Of a DNA stretch of 64,000 bases, positions 521 through 38,289 are shown in pieces. The notes below the pieces were generated by a model. It had not been told where the DNA came from. It did no database searches and saw only the letters and a list, made by a program, of their open reading frames with translations. Position numbers and translations under genes: made by a program. The stretch is from Dicyema japonicum (taxonomy: Eukaryota; Animalia; Dicyemida): contig RDEW01000032.1 of NCBI GenBank assembly GCA_011109175.1, positions 527,334 to 591,333 of the forward strand, in the 5' to 3' direction. Every line of letters starts with the position of its first letter. Position 1 is the stretch's first letter.

Positions 521-1364
521 GAAGTGAAAAAACCTTCACTAATATTCATCGATCACGTTAGGATGTTATTCTTCCTGGATTCGATTCCCCTTACTTTGTC
601 ATAGGTTTTTATTCCTTTTCCTACTCTTCACTCGTTATACAAAATTTTTGTCATGTGATACACATATCTTAGTATAAATAAACCGACATTACATGCTTCT
701 ACGTCTTCAAAACGGACATCCTATGGAATTTTTTGATGCCTTAAGACGGATATCTTTTGAGTTTTTTGGTGACCAAAAGAGTTGGAATATCAGACAAGGG
801 ATTCCGGTTAAAAATATAAAGTTGCCCATTTGATTACTGTCAAATGATAGATACATGAACACGTGAGTTACTTAAATTATTAAAATAGGAGTACCATAGA
901 ATTCTCATATATGAGGATTTCAGCTTAAATTCAGGCATGTTTTTAATTCAACTATGGTCCACGTGAGGCATATATTTGAATAGAGTCAACTTTTTTCCAA
1001 ATTTTTGAAATATAGATTTTATAAGAATGTTCAAAACTACAAGTTAAATCAACAAAAACATTTAAAATCTGATAAAAAATATCAAGACAAGAGCGAGACC
1101 AAAGAGGTCGAAAACACAAGACACGAGTAAAATAATATTCCGGACGAAAGCCCGAAGCAGATATTCTATACAAAATATATCCAATAAAATATCTAATATT
1201 GAAATCACATAAACCTCCCTAAAATCTGTCCTATAAAGAAGGTGGTCTCCATAATAACGTCTCATAAGGACTTTGTTGAACCCAAATCTCTATTTTAAAT
1301 CCGGTTTTCGTCCTCTCATTTGGACGAATGTCACGTATATTTGAAGCATACATTTTAATTTAAT

Positions 1365-1535
1365 TTATTAACCCCGGATACACCAAAAAAGAAGTTAAAA
1401 AAAACAACTAATTAAGTGCATCCAGTTTCCATTCTACAGAATCAGAGTCCATCCGGAATCAACATGAAAGGTAAAAGACGTCCATACTTGCAGCTGTGGA
1501 AATCCATCCAGTGGAGTGGGAGTAAAAGTGGCATA
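1365..1535 (-). mobile_element. 3' end of an unclassified LINE family (copy 1 of 3) with terminal hairpin
   Basis: Strong DNA similarity to 28255-28410; inverted repeat GGATACAC(1376)...GTGCATCC(1416). Confidence 0.6.
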
Positions 1536-3289
1536 CAACTTTCGGATCAAGTAAGGGCTGCTTCATTCATTGCAATTTATGTCTTTGTTGTTTTTTGGGA
1601 TAGTTTGGCCAAAAGTTACATTTTAAATTTAAACAACCACAAGCGAAAGAAAGTCAAATAAATCTATAACTTTAGATTGAGCAACTTGTGGAACTTAAAA
1701 ATGCTAAATTTAGCATTGAGCCTTTTTCAATTGAACCAGTTTTCTGAAATTTTTATTTTAGTCTGAAATATCTAACGGCGAGGAAAGTCAGTCTTGGTGG
1801 GAAAAAGAAGCGACGTCTCTTATTCGGAAATTCAGAAGAAATAAATAATTTTAATATTTAGAATACTTTTGCCGAGGAAGTAAATGTAAAATTTGTATAT
1901 CTACTTTTTAAATTTAAAATCTTTCCGTTAATAGGAGTTCCATCACAAAACCGTTGTCATCAAAGTTACATGAAGGTCACATAGCGATTTTGCCTGTATT
2001 TCAAATTTAAAGTACAAGTAGTATTTAAATTAAATATTTTTTTAATTTAAAATTTATTATAATAATTACATGAATAAAAAAATATTATTATTAACACGAG
2101 GCTATCAGTTTTGGTTGTATAGATGGACGGTTTAAAACTATAATATTTGTTTGGATCCAGCGAAACTTTATTGCGCCGCTGTGGTTTGTAATAACTATTT
2201 TTATCAAAAATAGATCGTGAGTAAAAAAAAATTTATTCTTCAAATTGGGTTTGTGTCCAATAACTTTATCCTAATCGTGGGGGACTGTCATCAAAATATC
2301 TAATAGTTTGACATTTATTCAGAATCACCTAATTTAATTGAGGTAGGTCGACTGAATAAGACCGAGAATCCGAGATTGTATGGATTCACTTATGATATGC
2401 ATATTGGTCATAATTGATCATCGAAAAAACATAATTCGAGTTAAATGTTCGAGTTTGGGTGTTTGACTTTATTGTGATGAATTTTGTTGAGAATTCTTAA
2501 ATTTTAGCTTTCTTTAACTGCCGTCTCCACTCTTTAATGTTTATTGAATGTTTAAAATAATATTATTTTTTCGTTTTTTCCTTAATTTTGTTTATTCTAA
2601 TAAAATTTATTTATGTTTATTACCAATGAATTAAGTTACGTTAAATATGAGGAAAGTTGAAATAATAGTTATCGGACTCGACGTTTGTTATGCTTATACA
2701 TGAATCAGTTTTTTCTCTCATTTTTATGCTAAAAATATGTAAGTTTTTGTAAGACATTATGTAATCATTACAATTTTTCATTGCATCATGGTTGATGTAA
2801 TTCAGTCATCGATTTTGTAATGTATTCAGAGATGTCGGGAACTTAAAGGTTTTGTCTTTAATTTCACCTGAAGCAAAATTAAAGTAATTTAAAAAGAGAT
2901 CTTCTACATTGAGGTTGTGGAAAACAATCAGTAAATATTATCTGAAAGCAAGACAGTTTCCACCGTGTACGGTGTTTCGTTAAACAGGCAGTCTAACAGG
3001 CACTAAAGTTAAATCTATAACCCTAAGTCAATCGTCAAAGTTAGCAGCCTCTGATCCATAGCTTACTGATGAGGATATTCAAGCTAAATATACTGAGGAC
3101 GTCATGCATTCTAAAGGATGACTGAGAGGTTATGACTTTTTAATGGAAGACAAGAATTTGGTAAACAAATATATATGTGCTAATAAAAATCTACAGGTCT
3201 CTGATTTAAAACTGTCTGTGGATGCTTCATAACTTACTACAGTAAAGATCAGTCTTCTGTGAGACATTATGAAATATTTACGACACTCC

Positions 3290-4720
3290 TGATATCATCA
3301 ACTGAGGATTTAACATATTATATCTCCCCTTAATTGAGAAGCAAGTGTTTCCCAAATCTCTCAATAAATTATCATCGAAATAGAACGTATTGATAATGTA
3401 CATCCGGGTAAAGTATTCTGATGTGGGTGAGGAGAGAGATCCTTTTTGGATTCCCGCCAAGTACGTGGCGTCTCCTGAGTTAGATGGATCCAATAAGACC
3501 TCTTGGAATTGAAGAAACCAAAAAGTAGAAAGTACCATTTAGATGAATTATGTAATGATGTAGTAAAATCATCCCTTCCGTTATTTACAGGGCCTGGTAT
3601 TGCGAGATATTTGTTCAACCACAGCAAACATTCTTCAACCATGTTTGTATCTTTCGACGTCTTTTACCTAAGTTATCCAGTGTGTGCCGGGCTAGTTCCC
3701 TCACTCCTCTCTATTTTGTATATGATTCTGTTGCGTTCTTTTTTAAGAGAGTCAGTGAAGCTTGACGAGTTCTAAGACTCAATTAAGAGTCTGAATTTCC
3801 TTTAGTTTTTTGCCAATTCTTCTATTTCTTCGTCAAAAGTTCCCTTGAACCTCCTTGGAAAATTTCCCAGTACCATCCCAGCAGCCTGACTGACTCTGCT
3901 CGAAATATTCTTCCATAGCAGCCCGGGTGACATATTCGTGTCGACATTTTCAAGCAGTTTCGATTTTTTCTCGCCGTACTTTTAACGGATATTGTCAGAA
4001 GCAAACCACGGCCAAGGTCCTCACCGCGTACGAGCTGCCAGTACTCTAGATATTCCAAAGCGTCTCTAGAATGAGACGTGGCACTAGTAGTCTGTTATCA
4101 CTTGAGGTCATCATGCCACTGTACGAACGGAAGTCTGTGGGTAGCCTCCTCAGTGTTTGCATGCATAGTATGTAGTCGATTTGGTTAAATATATGGACAC
4201 GATTTCTACAGGAGTCTCTCCTCTGCCATGTCAACGTCGTATTATGTCACGCTGCATGTCCGAACGCCGTGTTACAAAGGAACAGTCTCGCAGAAGTGTA
4301 TAAGGACAGATTTCTGATCCCTCAATCGTGGCTGCCCAGGCAATTTGATTCGTCCCGCTTATCCCCACTTTGGAATTCAAGTCTCCAGTTATAAAGAGCA
4401 TGTAGGAGCTGACAGGGAAGAGTAAGCCGATTATAAGGACGAGTAGAAATTTTAAAGTTCCTCTGCTTTGGCGGATACTTTCACTGTGGTCGATATATAT
4501 CGATGGAGTAACATTATGGTTGTTTCCAAGGGGTAGTTGAAGATGGCAATCCTGTCGTTGATACTCCACGGTCTATGAGCCACCCCATCTGAGTCCATGT
4601 GTATAGCAAACTCTATCCAATCATTTCGGCAGCCTGACGGTGGTAGGAGCAGTCGATACACGTTCACAAATTTCATCCAGGCCATTGGGAACTTTAGTCA
4701 ACCTGGAGACAGCATACAAA
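3290..4720 (-). mobile_element. RTE-clade LINE, decayed (APE endonuclease plus RT remnants)
   Basis: FAIH..WSINDRIA, GDLNSKVG, NQIDYILC..RSY.G..SSD(H) and GIQKG.SLS..FDD motifs in order on the minus strand. Confidence 0.75.
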
Positions 4721-20418: not shown

Positions 20419-20633
20419 CTGGAGGATCATATGTTTTAGAAGTAAATATAGAGTACAATAATTTAAAAAATAAATATAAATATACTATGTAATTAATATT
20501 CAATACATATCATATTAAAATAAAAAATAAATTTTAATTATATTGTTATATAATGATTTAAGCTAAGTAATACATTAACATCTCAATTTAATTAATAAAC
20601 ATATTCGACTAGGCTTTTTTCCTAGAAATATTG

Positions 20634-21455
20634 CCACTGGTGAAAAAGTGGTGCCATTTGTGCTACAAGACGAAGAAATATACTACGAGTTTGAGTAACA
20701 TACTTCAGGCCTAATGGGGATGTGATGAAAGATGCTTTGTTTGTTCAGATTCACATAGAAGATCGCAGTGTCCAGTTAAAACAATAATAAGTTTTTTGAA
20801 TTGTGGTTCATCCATCGACTTTGCCAATTATGGAAGATGTCCCAAGGCTGTTGAAGCTAACATAGCGAAAAAAAACAAAATTGACCAAAAAGGAAAGAAT
20901 CGAATGGAAAATTATCTCTAAAACGAGAAAATGCCCTTAATGGAGAAAGTGAAGTTTCCAAATTGGAACGAATAAGAAATTAAAACTGGCTGGAATAGGA
21001 CATATAGTAAGAAACATTCTAAAAAAAACAGTAGAAGCTTCAATACAGAGAAGAGAGGGCAGCCACCGAAAAAAAACAGAAGTAGTCAGGATAACCCTGA
21101 TTAATGCCCGTTCTCTTTGGAAACGGGCCTCAGTGCTGGTTGCCTATAGCCAGCAACGATCCAGATGGAAGTTCTAATTATAACGAAACTAAATTGAAGC
21201 ACATGGATTGGATTTAGCATCTGAAATGATGACGAATACGAAAGAAAACAAGAAGAATCGGTGATTTATTACATTGCTTGTGAAACTCGCATTGTAATTG
21301 GGCTTTTTACGGAGAAGAGACATAACGGTGTCTCATGATAGTGCCCCGATATAGACGACCCCAAATTTTGGCTTTCCTCTTTAGTTAATGGCTCTTACCT
21401 TGTTTAGTTAGTTGGGGTTTTGCGAATAAATCATGTTATCTGTTATCTGTTATCT
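20634..21455 (+). mobile_element. Non-autonomous LINE derivative (ORF1 3' part, ORF2 stub and ORF2 3' end)
   Basis: CCHC knuckles (RCFVCSDSH..CP; NCGSS..ANYGRCPK), RITLINARSL..PD..I.ETKL, then directly a C-terminal knuckle remnant; (TGTTATC)3 tail; TSD GAAATATTG at 20625-20633 and 21456-21464. Confidence 0.85.
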
Positions 21456-21559
21456 GAAATATTGGTCCAATTATTTTGTTCTTTCAATTTTGTCTCCGCT
21501 AGTCGGGGTTCTAAATTTTACTAAAAACTAAAATGGATAAATTTTTTTCAGCAATACTT

Positions 21560-36515: not shown

Positions 36516-36785
36516 AACGGCTCATTAAGATTCTTCATTTACTTTTCAGTTATTAATAATTTTTTTTTTTTAATTTCTAATAAATTATTACGCAGCATTG
36601 CAAGAATTAATAATCCAATATTTCCGTATTTTAAAAGATCTCTGTTGCAATCGTGAGAGACAACGCAACGTCGATAATGTCGGCGGGGTCCACTTTGGAT
36701 AGAAGGCAGTTTTAAATATGATTTACTGTAAATATGGTTTTCTGATTTAAATAAATTTCATGTTCTTCAATATGATTTTTCGCAA

Positions 36786-38085
36786 ATAACAGATAACATG
36801 ATTTATTCGCAAAACCCCAACTAACTAAACAAGGTAAGAGCCATTAACTAAAGAGGAAAGCCAAGATTAGGGGTCGTCTATATCGGGGCACTCTCATGAG
36901 ACACCGCATGTCTCTTCTCCGTAAAAAGCCCCAATTACAATGCGAGTTTCCACAAGCAATGTAATAAATCACCGATTCTTCTCGTTTTTCTTTCGTATTC
37001 GTCATTAATTTCAGATGCTAAATCCAATCCATGTGCTTCAATTTAGTTTCGTTTATAATTAGAACTTTCATCTGGATCGTGCTGGCTATAGCAACCAGCA
37101 CTGAGGCCCGTTTCCGAAGAGAACGGGCATTAATCAGAGTTATCCTGACTACTTCTGGTTTTTTCGGTGGCTGCCCTCTCTTCTTAAGAGCACCACTCTC
37201 TTCTCTGTGTTGAAGCTTCTACTGTTTCTTTTTTAGAAGGTTTCTTATTATATGTCGTATTCCAGCCAGTCTGCCCATACATTCTAAACTCTGACTTTAA
37301 TTTCTTATTCGTTCCAATTTTGGAAACTTCACTTTCTCCATTATGGGCATTTTCTCTCTTTTCTGTGTTGAAGCTTCTACTGTTTCTTTTTTAGAAGGTT
37401 TCTTATTATATGTCGTATTCCAGCCAGTTTTAATTTCTTATTAGTTCCAATTTTGGAAACTTCACTTTCTCCATTATGGGCATTTTCTCTCTTTTCTGTG
37501 TTGAAGCTTCTACTGTTTCTTTTTTAGAAGGTTTCTTATTATATGTCGTATTCCAGCCAGTTTTAATTTCTTATTAGTTCCAATTTTGGAAACTTCACTT
37601 TCTCCATTATGGGCATTTTCTCGTTTTAGAAATAATTTTCCATTCGATTCTTTCCTTTTTTGGTCAATTTTGTTTTTCTTCGCAATGTTAGCTTCAACAG
37701 CCTTGGGGCATCTTCCATAATTGGCAAAGTGGGTGGATGAACCACAATTCAACACGACTTATTATTGTTTGTAACCTGACACTGCGATCTTCTATGTGGC
37801 CTGAACAAACATCTTTTAACATATTTCTGGATGAACCACAATTCAACACGACTTATTATTGTTTGTAACCTGACACTGCGATCTTCTATGTGGCCTGAAC
37901 AAACATCTTTTAACATATTTCCATTAGGCCTGCAGTATGTTTCTCAACCTCGTTTTATATTCCTTCGTCTTGTAGCACCAGTGGCACCACTTATTCATCA
38001 GTGGCATCACAACGACGAGCTGAATCAACCTTACCCAATAGACGTCCAATGCCTGAACGGCATTGAGAATGATCAATCTCAACGC
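36786..38085 (-). mobile_element. Second copy of the non-autonomous LINE derivative, with internal tandem expansions
   Basis: Colinear with 20634-21455 including the same ORF2 deletion; three ~133-bp units (37204-37620), two 94-bp units (37734-37921), and a TGTTATCTGTTAT tail. Confidence 0.85.
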
Positions 38086-38289
38086 CATGTTTCAAAATCT
38101 TGAAATTAGATAAATGATCAAATAAATAAAATAATCAGTTAATTTATCCCCAGTAAAGCATATTTAAAACTGCCATCCATCCAAAGTGGACCTCGCGATG
38201 AAATTTAAGTCTATATATTTTTTTTGTATTTATTAAAAACAGTTTTAAAAAAGTAAATTAATTTCATAAATAATAATAATAAATTAAAC

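What the first reader, a model, noticed from the sequence alone, without database searches (positions are those of the whole stretch)
20625..21464. ORF1-retaining, ORF2-deleted LINE derivative that retrotransposed as a unit (HAL1-like)
Seen: ORF1 CCHC knuckles, about 45 codons of APE (RITLINARSL..PD..ETKL), then an immediate jump to the ORF2 C-terminal knuckle and 3' UTR. It is closed by a (TGTTATC)3 tail, flanked by a 9-bp TSD (GAAATATTG) and 5'-truncated. A second diverged copy at 36786-38085 (opposite strand) has the same deletion, a shorter tail and different flanks. Known: HAL1 elements are ORF1-only parasites of L1. Inferred: this is an independently evolved 'half-LINE' in a non-L1 clade, mobilised in trans.
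Basis: partly seen in the sequence, partly recalled or inferred. Interest (0 to 1): 0.75.

Follow-up and report, generated by a model that had tools for sequence, protein, structure and literature searches.

The report
Non-coding deletion derivative of a LINE
This is one copy of a short, non-coding hitch-hiker element, built from a foreign 95-base head plus leftover pieces of a resident jumping gene (LINE), that spread to at least 40 sites by borrowing that LINE's machinery; it is a real family of a known kind and does not carry a working ORF1 gene as first proposed.

Summary
Window 20634-21455 is a clean retroposon insertion with a 9-bp target-site duplication (GAAATATTG), a (TGTTATC)3 tail and an ORF2 deletion junction at 21199/21200. 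The second copy (36786-38012, minus strand) has the same junction.

- **Copy number:** the junction recurs in at least 40 places on about 24 contigs of the 67.5-Mb genome. Its statistics match the published Dicyema japonicum assembly.
- **Partner:** an autonomous LINE ("F2", about 3.9 kb) shares the last ~255 bp at ~95% identity and the same tail.

The HAL1-like reading fails.

- **No ORF1:** the element keeps only ORF1 codons ~150-265 of 281. It has no start codon or N-terminal domain, and stops or frameshifts occur in 22 of 23 copies. One subfamily shares a single frameshift pattern, so its master copy was already non-coding.
- **Not 5'-truncated:** the family has its own fixed 5' end, a ~95-nt head with a 30-nt hairpin. 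About 76 nt of it are shared with an unrelated ~570-bp non-autonomous family.
- **No C-terminal knuckle:** that stretch is the last ~32 ORF2 codons, which overlap a conserved 3' hairpin.

A sister deletion family sharing a different junction (at least 24 copies) includes members that keep the partner's 5' end and whole ORF1 region, and is the closer structural HAL1 analogue. The scan has already noted other LINE deletion derivatives in this genome.

The parts
20625..20633 (+). Left target-site duplication GAAATATTG
   Evidence: Exact 9-nt repeat of 21456-21464.
20634..20722 (+). Family-specific 5' head. It has no similarity to the partner LINE. In this copy it lacks the first ~6 nt (GTGGTG), and so one arm of the 30-nt hairpin.
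   Evidence: The head occurs at 40 or more sites and always starts at the same point. 76 nt are shared at 85-89% with family H, L037:2743-2818. There is no Rfam or tRNA hit.
20723..21053 (+). Remnant of partner ORF1 (residues ~152-265 of 281; knuckle 2 intact, knuckle 3 degenerate), with stops and a frameshift
   Evidence: blastn gives 87% identity to F2. tblastn gives 46% identity with 2 stops.
21051..21199 (+). ORF1-ORF2 spacer and the first ~50 codons of partner ORF2 (start of the AP-endonuclease domain: VVRITLINARSL...ETKLK)
   Evidence: blastn gives 92.7% identity to F2; tblastn. The partner ORF2 hits Pfam PF14529, PF03372 and PF00078.
21199..21200 (+). Deletion junction. About 2.34 kb of ORF2 is missing (L045-based coordinates 1199-3537), with 1 nt of overlap.
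   Evidence: The junction-spanning query is matched end to end at 40 loci.
21200..21297 (+). Last ~32 codons of partner ORF2 plus the stop (TAA at 21295-21297). The frame is broken in this copy. Hairpin 1 lies at 21268-21298.
   Evidence: Hairpin 1 shows two compensatory pairs between LINE families F1 and F2.
21298..21433 (+). Partner 3' UTR with hairpin 2 (GAGACAT/GTGTCTC) at 21317-21334
   Evidence: About 95% identical to F2 and the deletion family D2, and homologous to the F1 3' UTR.
21434..21455 (+). Tail: (TGTTATC)x3 plus T
   Evidence: The same tail unit is seen on F2, D2 and other E copies.
21456..21464 (+). Right target-site duplication GAAATATTG
36786..38012 (-). Second family copy (B). 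It has the same junction (37036/37035), a two-unit tail, and private tandem duplications (unit ~133 bp x3; ~77 bp x2). It lies between ~45-nt inverted repeats, and no target-site duplication was found.

Best explanation
The feature is one copy of a non-coding, non-autonomous retroposon family, here called E. The short form is ~0.82 kb and the long form ~1.2 kb.

**Composition, 5' to 3'**
1. A ~95-nt head with a 30-nt hairpin. It is unrelated to the partner LINE and is shared with another non-autonomous family (H).
2. Decayed fragments of the partner LINE's ORF1 (codons ~150-265) and the first ~50 codons of its ORF2.
3. The partner's 3' module: the last ~32 ORF2 codons, a 3' UTR with two conserved stem-loops, and a TGTTATC-repeat tail.

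**How it moves**
- Shown: the anatomy, the partner, the copy number and the target-site duplications.
- Inferred: E RNA is most likely made by RNA polymerase II or by read-through transcription, because every copy has T5 and T4 runs inside the 3' module. The reverse transcriptase of the partner LINE F2 recognises the shared 3' module, as in 'stringent' LINE/SINE pairs. The endonuclease nicks the target and the tail repeats pair with the nicked DNA. Reverse transcription then runs to the fixed 5' end of the RNA, giving 7-12-bp target-site duplications.

**Role of the coding fragments**
The ORF1 and endonuclease fragments are passenger sequence, not genes.

**Origin of the variants**
The variants are E short, E long, D2 and D3. 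D2 is F2 with a different internal deletion; D3 is the E head joined to a D2-type 3' half. They look like products of internal deletion and template switching among co-expressed RNAs (inferred).
For: **Family and junction**
- At least 82 matches in the genome.
- 40 of 40 scored junction matches are end to end, on about 24 contigs.

**Independent insertions**
- Distinct target-site duplications of 7-12 bp occur in about a dozen of 18 copies, often with 1-4 nt of tail/target microhomology.

**Partner**
- F2 full-length copies run ~3.8-3.9 kb (L045:1070-4861; L046 from ~961).
- F2 has a CCHC ORF1 (Pfam zf-CCHC, E = 0.0011, 19.4 bits, just under the 20.8-bit curated cut-off) and an endonuclease plus reverse-transcriptase ORF2.
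- E matches F2 in three blocks: 87%, 92.7% and 95.3% identity.
- The 3' ~255 bp and the tail are near-identical in E, D2 and F2. The sister LINE F1 has a much more diverged 3' UTR (conserved blocks only) and a CTTGT tail.

**3' module**
- The same two-hairpin fold appears in F1 and in F2/E, with compensatory changes in hairpin 1.

**Non-coding**
- The longest ATG-initiated ORF is 99 aa or less, and no ORF1 residue before 143 is matched in any of 23 copies.
- A frameshift pattern is shared within the Ea subfamily.

**Fixed 5' head**
-. It is shared with family H.

**Polymerase**
- T5 and T4 runs occur in all 23 copies.

**Modular relatives**
- The D2/D3 junction occurs in at least 24 loci.
- E long is a chimera of an Ea unit and an Eb unit.
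Against: - No F2 copy with a fully open ORF2 was found. The best open frames are 652-811 aa, and only 68 of 5072 candidates were scored. The partner may be extinct, or broken by assembly errors, so present-day mobilisation is unproven.
- Recognition of the 3' module by the F2 protein is an analogy, not a test. Hairpin 2 is invariant and so says nothing either way.
- Some copies lie in head-to-tail arrays (C312, C344). These could have grown by tandem duplication rather than by new insertions.
- The origin and function of the head are unknown.
- Copy B has no detectable target-site duplication.
Confidence: 0.85

Rival explanations
1. HAL1-like half-LINE: the element encodes a functional ORF1 protein that helps its own mobilisation while borrowing ORF2 protein in trans.
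For: It contains ORF1-derived sequence with one canonical knuckle. One Eb-type copy (L008) keeps residues 152-265 in a single open frame. The sister family D2 keeps the whole ORF1 region and the 5' UTR.
Against: - E lacks ORF1 codons 1 to ~149: the Met, the N-terminal domain and knuckle 1.
- No ATG-initiated ORF exceeds 99 aa in 23 copies.
- Stops or frameshifts occur in 22 of 23 copies, with a pattern shared across the Ea subfamily.
- The four D2 copies examined in detail are either 5'-truncated or have a broken ORF1.
Confidence: 0.03
2. The copies arose by segmental or tandem DNA duplication of one accidental deleted LINE, not by retrotransposition.
For: Head-to-tail arrays exist (C312:2176812-2182290 and C344:157207-162514). 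Copy B has no target-site duplication.
Against: The flanks differ, and about a dozen copies have different target-site duplications directly at the element ends. The flanks of window copy A match no other fetched locus. Tails vary in length, and some copies are 5'-truncated (L013, L019).
Confidence: 0.02
3. E is mobilised not by F2 but by the currently intact sister LINE F1, or by both.
For: F1 has many intact 898-907-aa ORF2 copies, while F2 has none among those scored. F1 and F2 share the 3' two-hairpin architecture. F1, F2 and E use the same insertion hot spot in repeat T.
Against: E's 3' module is ~95% identical to F2's, whereas F1's aligns only through conserved blocks. E's tail unit is F2's (TGTTATC), not F1's (CTTGT).
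Confidence: 0.1

Closest known systems
Bipartite ORF-absent non-autonomous LINEs (RIME/Ingi, NARTc/L1Tc, Vingi derivatives, R2 SIDEs, Bov-A/Bov-B), as listed in PMC5786205
   Same: It is an internal-deletion derivative that keeps the partner's 3' recognition end, is non-coding, and has been amplified as a unit with target-site duplications.
   Different: E does not keep the partner's own 5' end. It starts with a foreign head, and its LINE-derived 'front' is internal coding sequence (ORF1 codons ~150-265 plus the ORF2 start). The partner carries a CCHC ORF1, whereas PMC5786205 reports such derivatives only for the RTE, Ingi, Vingi and R2 clades. The partner's clade was not resolved here.
SINEs with LINE-derived bodies (Bov-tA, WALLSI, SINE2-1_ACar and others; PMC5786205)
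   Same: It has a head + LINE-derived body + LINE tail architecture. Heads and tails are exchanged between families: the E head is shared with family H, and D3 is the E head joined to a D2-type 3' half.
   Different: The head shows no tRNA, 5S, 7SL or snRNA signal. The element is 0.8-1.2 kb long and contains T5/T4 runs, so polymerase III transcription is unlikely. The body comes from coding sequence rather than from a 5' UTR.
HAL1 (L1), HeT-A (Jockey clade), Ag-Sponge (CR1 clade): ORF1-present non-autonomous LINEs (PMC5753468, PMC5786205)
   Same: ORF2 is deleted, ORF1-derived sequence is retained, and mobilisation is in trans.
   Different: Those elements encode ORF1 protein. E has only a decayed C-terminal fragment without a start codon. 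Family D2 in the same genome (L057:1036-2994) is the closer structural match, but no intact ORF1 was found in it.
Stringent-type LINE/SINE pairs with short-repeat tails (UnaL2/UnaSINE; Kajikawa and Okada 2002, as cited in PMC5786205)
   Same: The 3' stem-loop region plus a short tandem-repeat tail is shared between the LINE and its parasite. There is tail/target microhomology at insertion sites.
   Different: Nothing here has been tested experimentally. The tail unit is a heptamer, TGTTATC.

Membership tests
HAL1-type (ORF1-present) non-autonomous LINE | Encodes a complete ORF1 protein (start codon and full domain set) | tested here: not met
   Only ORF1 residues ~143-265 of 281 are ever matched. 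No ATG-initiated ORF exceeds 99 aa. Stops or frameshifts occur in 22 of 23 copies.
HAL1-type (ORF1-present) non-autonomous LINE | ORF2 removed by internal deletion, with the 3' end of the parent kept | tested here: met
   The junction at 21199/21200 joins ORF2 codon ~59 to the last ~32 codons. The 3' 255 bp are ~95% identical to F2.
HAL1-type (ORF1-present) non-autonomous LINE | Keeps the parent's 5' end (5' UTR/promoter) | tested here: not met
   E nucleotides 10-98 do not match F2, whose 5' UTR and ORF1 start lie elsewhere. This feature is met in sister family D2 (L057).
Bipartite ORF-absent non-autonomous LINE (RIME/SIDE type) | Non-coding, and made only of the parent's extreme 5' and 3' parts | tested here: not met
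   It is non-coding and keeps the 3' part. However, the 5' terminus is a foreign head and the LINE-derived front is internal.
Bipartite ORF-absent non-autonomous LINE (RIME/SIDE type) | Amplified as a unit by the parent's machinery (same junction at many loci, with target-site duplications) | tested here: met
   At least 40 junction-bearing loci and 7-12-bp target-site duplications. Actual mobilisation by F2 protein is not testable here.
SINE (head-body-tail retroposon) | Head derived from a small RNA gene with an internal polymerase III promoter | tested here: inconclusive
   There is no tRNA by ARAGORN and no Rfam family at E <= 1, or any meaningful one at E <= 10. T5/T4 runs inside all copies argue against polymerase III. 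An earlier scan note (s1-336697) derives a hairpin head in this genome from tRNA-Arg; I could not confirm that it is the same head.
SINE (head-body-tail retroposon) | 3' tail shared with a partner LINE | tested here: met
APE-type non-LTR retrotransposon (partner F2) | AP-endonuclease and reverse-transcriptase domains in ORF2, and a gag-like CCHC ORF1 | tested here: met
   Pfam PF03372 and PF14529 plus PF00078, and zf-CCHC (E = 0.0011, 19.4 bits, just under the 20.8-bit curated cut-off). Three Cys/His motifs are visible in ORF1. No RNase H domain and no C-terminal knuckle.
Named LINE clade of the partner (Jockey, I, CR1, ...) | Placement in a reverse-transcriptase phylogeny with reference elements | not tested
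   No reference set was available. The homologue search returned almost only unnamed metagenome proteins at 35% identity or less.

The most novel reading that the evidence does not exclude
The hairpin head may be a portable 5' module, of a non-tRNA and probably polymerase II type, that converts arbitrary internal fragments of a CCHC-ORF1 LINE into successful SINE-like families and is swapped between parasites of different LINEs (E and D3 with F2; H with another partner). If so, this would be the first ORF-absent deletion-derivative and LINE-bodied retroposon system reported outside the RTE, Ingi, Vingi and R2 clades. It sits in a tiny parasite genome where these elements, together with the LINEs, repeatedly hit the same few target sequences.
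Probability: 0.3. Interest if true: 0.45.

Novelty: new member of a known kind. Interest (0 to 1): 0.3.

Why it matters
It documents how a LINE family in a very small, repeat-rich parasite genome is out-numbered by its own deletion derivatives: roughly six near-full-length F2 copies against at least 64 junction-bearing derivatives. It delimits the 3' module sufficient for mobilisation to about 255 bp or less, because two independent deletions end within 12 nt of each other. It also shows modular head and tail exchange among non-autonomous elements. For annotation, these copies should be masked as non-coding repeats and not called as gag-like or endonuclease gene fragments. It does not change how LINE parasitism is understood.

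Tried and rejected
- **Direct Pfam scan of the window copy:** impossible, because every frame has stops.
- **Rfam scans:** the window at gathering threshold, and the E and F2 loci at E <= 1, gave nothing. The head alone at E <= 10 gave only chance-level hits. ARAGORN found no tRNA. A ribozyme or tRNA origin of the head is therefore unsupported.
- **Sister LINE F1 as partner:** I first took F1, which sits next to several E copies, for the partner. This was rejected because only conserved blocks of its 3' end align with E's and its tail unit is CTTGT; the adjacency comes from shared insertion hot spots.
- **E as the 3' end of a longer LINE:** rejected because target-site duplications flank the head directly.
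- **Clade assignment from homologue names:** failed, because the hits are unnamed.
- **Target-site duplication for copy B:** none found.
- **Extended flank similarity between copy A and the other loci:** none.
- **dN/dS:** not computed. Shared frameshifts and the missing start codon already settle coding status, and post-insertion decay would swamp the signal.

Full report
**1. What is in the window**

The element proper is 20634-21455 (822 bp).
- It is bracketed by an exact 9-bp duplication, GAAATATTG (20625-20633 and 21456-21464).
- It ends in TGTTATC x3 plus T (21434-21455).
- A second copy lies on the minus strand at 36786-38012. It is 84-92% identical, has a two-unit tail and unrelated flanks, and carries private internal tandem duplications.
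- Its 5' end is set by the family alignment at about 38012, not 38085.

**2. Host genome**

The window is C246:527334-591333 of an assembly of 67,542,437 bases in 377 contigs with about 36% GC. These figures match the published Dicyema japonicum assembly: 67.5 Mb, 377 scaffolds, GC 36.7%, 48.9% repeats (PMC6736024). That paper does not characterise the LINE families beyond noting many ORF2 copies. Earlier notes of this scan call the genome dicyemid in one place and octopus in another. I rely on the assembly statistics. Nothing here looked human.

**3. It is a family that moved as a unit**
- The 840-bp query finds at least 82 matches.
- A 171-bp probe across the deletion junction is matched end to end, at 94-97% identity, by all 40 scored candidates on about 24 contigs.
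- About a dozen of 18 examined copies have their own target-site duplications of 7-12 bp. Examples are TCTAATAAATAG, CGGAAAAT, CAATAAATTTT and ATAATGATTTG. These often overlap the tail unit by 1-4 nt.
- The flanks of copy A match no other fetched locus.

Segmental duplication is therefore excluded for the family as a whole. Head-to-tail arrays in C312 and C344 may have grown partly by local duplication.

**4. The autonomous partner**

A Pfam RVT_1 scan of the genome finds thousands of candidates. One family, here called F2, matches the element in three blocks:
- ORF1 region: 87% identity.
- ORF2 start: 92.7% identity.
- Last ~255 bp: 95.3% identity.

Near-full-length F2 copies are about 3.8-3.9 kb (L045:1070-4861; L046-L049 extend ~110 bp further 5'). 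F2 has the following parts:
- A 281-aa ORF1: MDSLK..., an N-terminal domain, then three Cys/His knuckles. The Pfam zf-CCHC match (E = 0.0011, 19.4 bits) is just under the 20.8-bit curated cut-off.
- An ORF2 with endonuclease (PF14529, PF03372) and reverse-transcriptase (PF00078) domains.
- No RNase H domain and no C-terminal knuckle. ORF2 ends ...AHGLDLASEIDDEYERKTRRIGDLLHCLWKLAL*.
- The same TGTTATC-type tail.

In coordinates counted from L045:1070, the element consists of its head, then 485-835, 1052-1198 and 3538-3792. The ORF2 deletion removes 1199-3537, with a single nucleotide of overlap at the junction.

**5. It does not retain ORF1 in any functional sense**
- tblastn of F2 ORF1 against 23 copies never matches a residue before 143. 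The Met, the N-terminal domain and knuckle 1 are all absent.
- In copy A only knuckle 2 is intact.
- No copy has an ATG-initiated ORF longer than 99 aa, and the longest ones are accidental fusion frames in the long form.
- 22 of 23 copies have stops or frameshifts in the remnant.
- Members of the Ea subfamily (L002, L014, L017, L027) share one frameshift pattern, so their master copy was already non-coding and still amplified.

HAL1 is defined as encoding ORF1p (PMC5753468), and that feature is not met. ORF1-present half-LINEs outside L1 are already known: HeT-A and Ag-Sponge (PMC5786205).

**6. It is not 5'-truncated; it has its own head**
- Most copies begin at the same nucleotides, GTGGTG|CCACTGGTGAATAAGTGGTGCCACTGGTGC. 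Target-site duplications lie immediately upstream or a few extra nucleotides upstream. Copy A lacks only the first ~6 nt.
- The first 30 nt fold into an 11-bp hairpin.
- The head, about 95 nt, has no similarity to F2.
- 76 nt of it recur at 85-89% identity at the start of an unrelated ~570-bp non-autonomous family, H (L037:2743-3313; at least 40 copies). The similarity stops exactly where F2 homology begins in E.
- Rfam and ARAGORN give no tRNA, ribozyme or snRNA assignment.
- All 23 copies carry T5 and T4 runs inside the conserved 3' module.

From the last point I infer polymerase II or read-through transcription rather than polymerase III.

**7. The 3' module**

E, D2 and F2 are near-identical over the last ~255 bp. 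The sister LINE F1 is about 60% identical in ORF2 protein, has a CTTGT tail, and includes intact 898-907-aa ORF2 copies. It has a homologous 3' UTR that folds into the same two stem-loops.
- Hairpin 1 overlaps the last ORF2 codons and shows two compensatory pairs between F1 and F2.
- The base of hairpin 2 also co-varies, while its top is invariant.

This agrees with an earlier scan note on a 3' hairpin in these LINEs (s1-309988). By analogy with stringent LINE/SINE pairs (Kajikawa and Okada 2002, cited in PMC5786205), I infer that this module is what the F2 protein recognises. That inference is untested.

**8. Relatives show modular evolution**
- **D2:** F2 1-1587 joined to 3526-3792. It keeps the 5' UTR and the whole ORF1 region.
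- **D3:** the E head and ORF1 remnant, then 1037-1587, then 3526-3792.
- D2 and D3 share one junction, found end to end in at least 24 loci at up to 99% identity (22 of them at 94% or more).
- The two independent deletions end 12 nt apart. This bounds the 3' sequence needed to about 255 bp.
- **E long (~1.2 kb):** an Ea-type front (to nt 571) joined to an Eb-type rear (from nt 202) at a 4-nt AATT overlap. A tree of the repeated unit separates the two halves cleanly.
- D2 is the better structural analogue of HAL1. However, the four D2 copies examined in detail are either 5'-truncated or have a broken ORF1.

**9. Caveats**
- No fully open F2 ORF2 was seen. The best open frames are 652-811 aa, and only a fraction of candidates was scored.
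- F2 may be extinct, or the assembly may carry indel errors.
- F1 as an alternative or additional driver cannot be excluded.
- The LINE clade was not resolved. The large protein search returned unnamed relatives at 35% identity or less, apart from one Octopus sinensis entry.

**10. Verdict**

This is a real, well-defined, non-coding, chimeric deletion derivative of a resident LINE. It is a new member of a known kind (non-autonomous LINE derivative, or a SINE with a LINE-derived body). It is not an independently evolved ORF1-encoding half-LINE. The scan has already recorded other LINE deletion derivatives in this genome (s1-324107, s1-371715), which I take to be a different family (not checked).

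Noticed in passing
L070:5454-8180 (Octopus sinensis assembly GCA_006345805.1, contig VCDQ01001570.1): An F1-like LINE, 86% identical in DNA over 2.7 kb to the dicyemid-assembly family, sits on a 388-kb contig of the host octopus assembly. Its 13-kb flank shares several other repeat families with G000 (70-96%) but shows no collinear single-copy match. Cross-contamination (in either direction) versus host-parasite transfer is unresolved.
   Followed up: partly
L066:1410-1699 (minus); occupied copies in L006, L008, L012, L023 and L045: A ~290-bp repeat (T) has an insertion hot spot, ATACGGGACG^WTTGCCATTTTG. LINE families F1 and F2 and element E all insert at the same nucleotides (TSD GGACGWTT). 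Four empty sites were found. Of the ~30 right halves, about ten could be matched to a known LINE or E end lying immediately alongside.
   Followed up: partly
window 21462-21477 and L003 (C279:228224-228239): Copy A and an independent copy on another contig are inserted 8-9 nt upstream of the same 16-mer, TTGGTCCAATTATTTT. This 16-mer has only 6 exact occurrences in the genome (3 clustered at C124:581-597 kb). That hints at sequence-directed targeting or a small target repeat. The motif resembles the T hot spot (ATTG..CCA..TTTTG).
   Followed up: partly
L037:2743-3313 (C1:248948-249518): Family H is a ~570-bp non-autonomous retroposon with at least 40 copies. It shares the 76-nt head with E but has an unrelated body containing an internal 81-nt repeat, and its 3' end is unlike that of F1 or F2. 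Its partner LINE was not identified.
   Followed up: partly
window 38150-38192 and 36690-36735: Copy B lies between ~45-nt inverted repeats (GGTCCACTTTGGATRGAWGGCAGTTTTAAATATG...). It is probably nested in a TIR element or foldback. No target-site duplication was found for B.
   Followed up: no
L044/L043 (C146:~313790-313800), junction of an E tail and a 5'-truncated F2: The tail ...AATCATGTTATC contains an ATG that is in frame with the ORF1 of the F2 copy inserted directly behind it, reading through as IMLSLIGFIQCFRC.... This is probably coincidental, but earlier scan notes describe LINEs in this genome that borrow upstream start codons.
   Followed up: no
L050:2320-4275 (minus) and L045: The F2 ORF2 open frame has no Met near its start (it begins ...GGALKKRGQSPKKPEVVRITLIN). 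Its first stretch lies downstream of the ORF1 stop in another frame. This suggests reinitiation or frameshifting, as noted elsewhere in this scan for another LINE (s1-400490).
   Followed up: no
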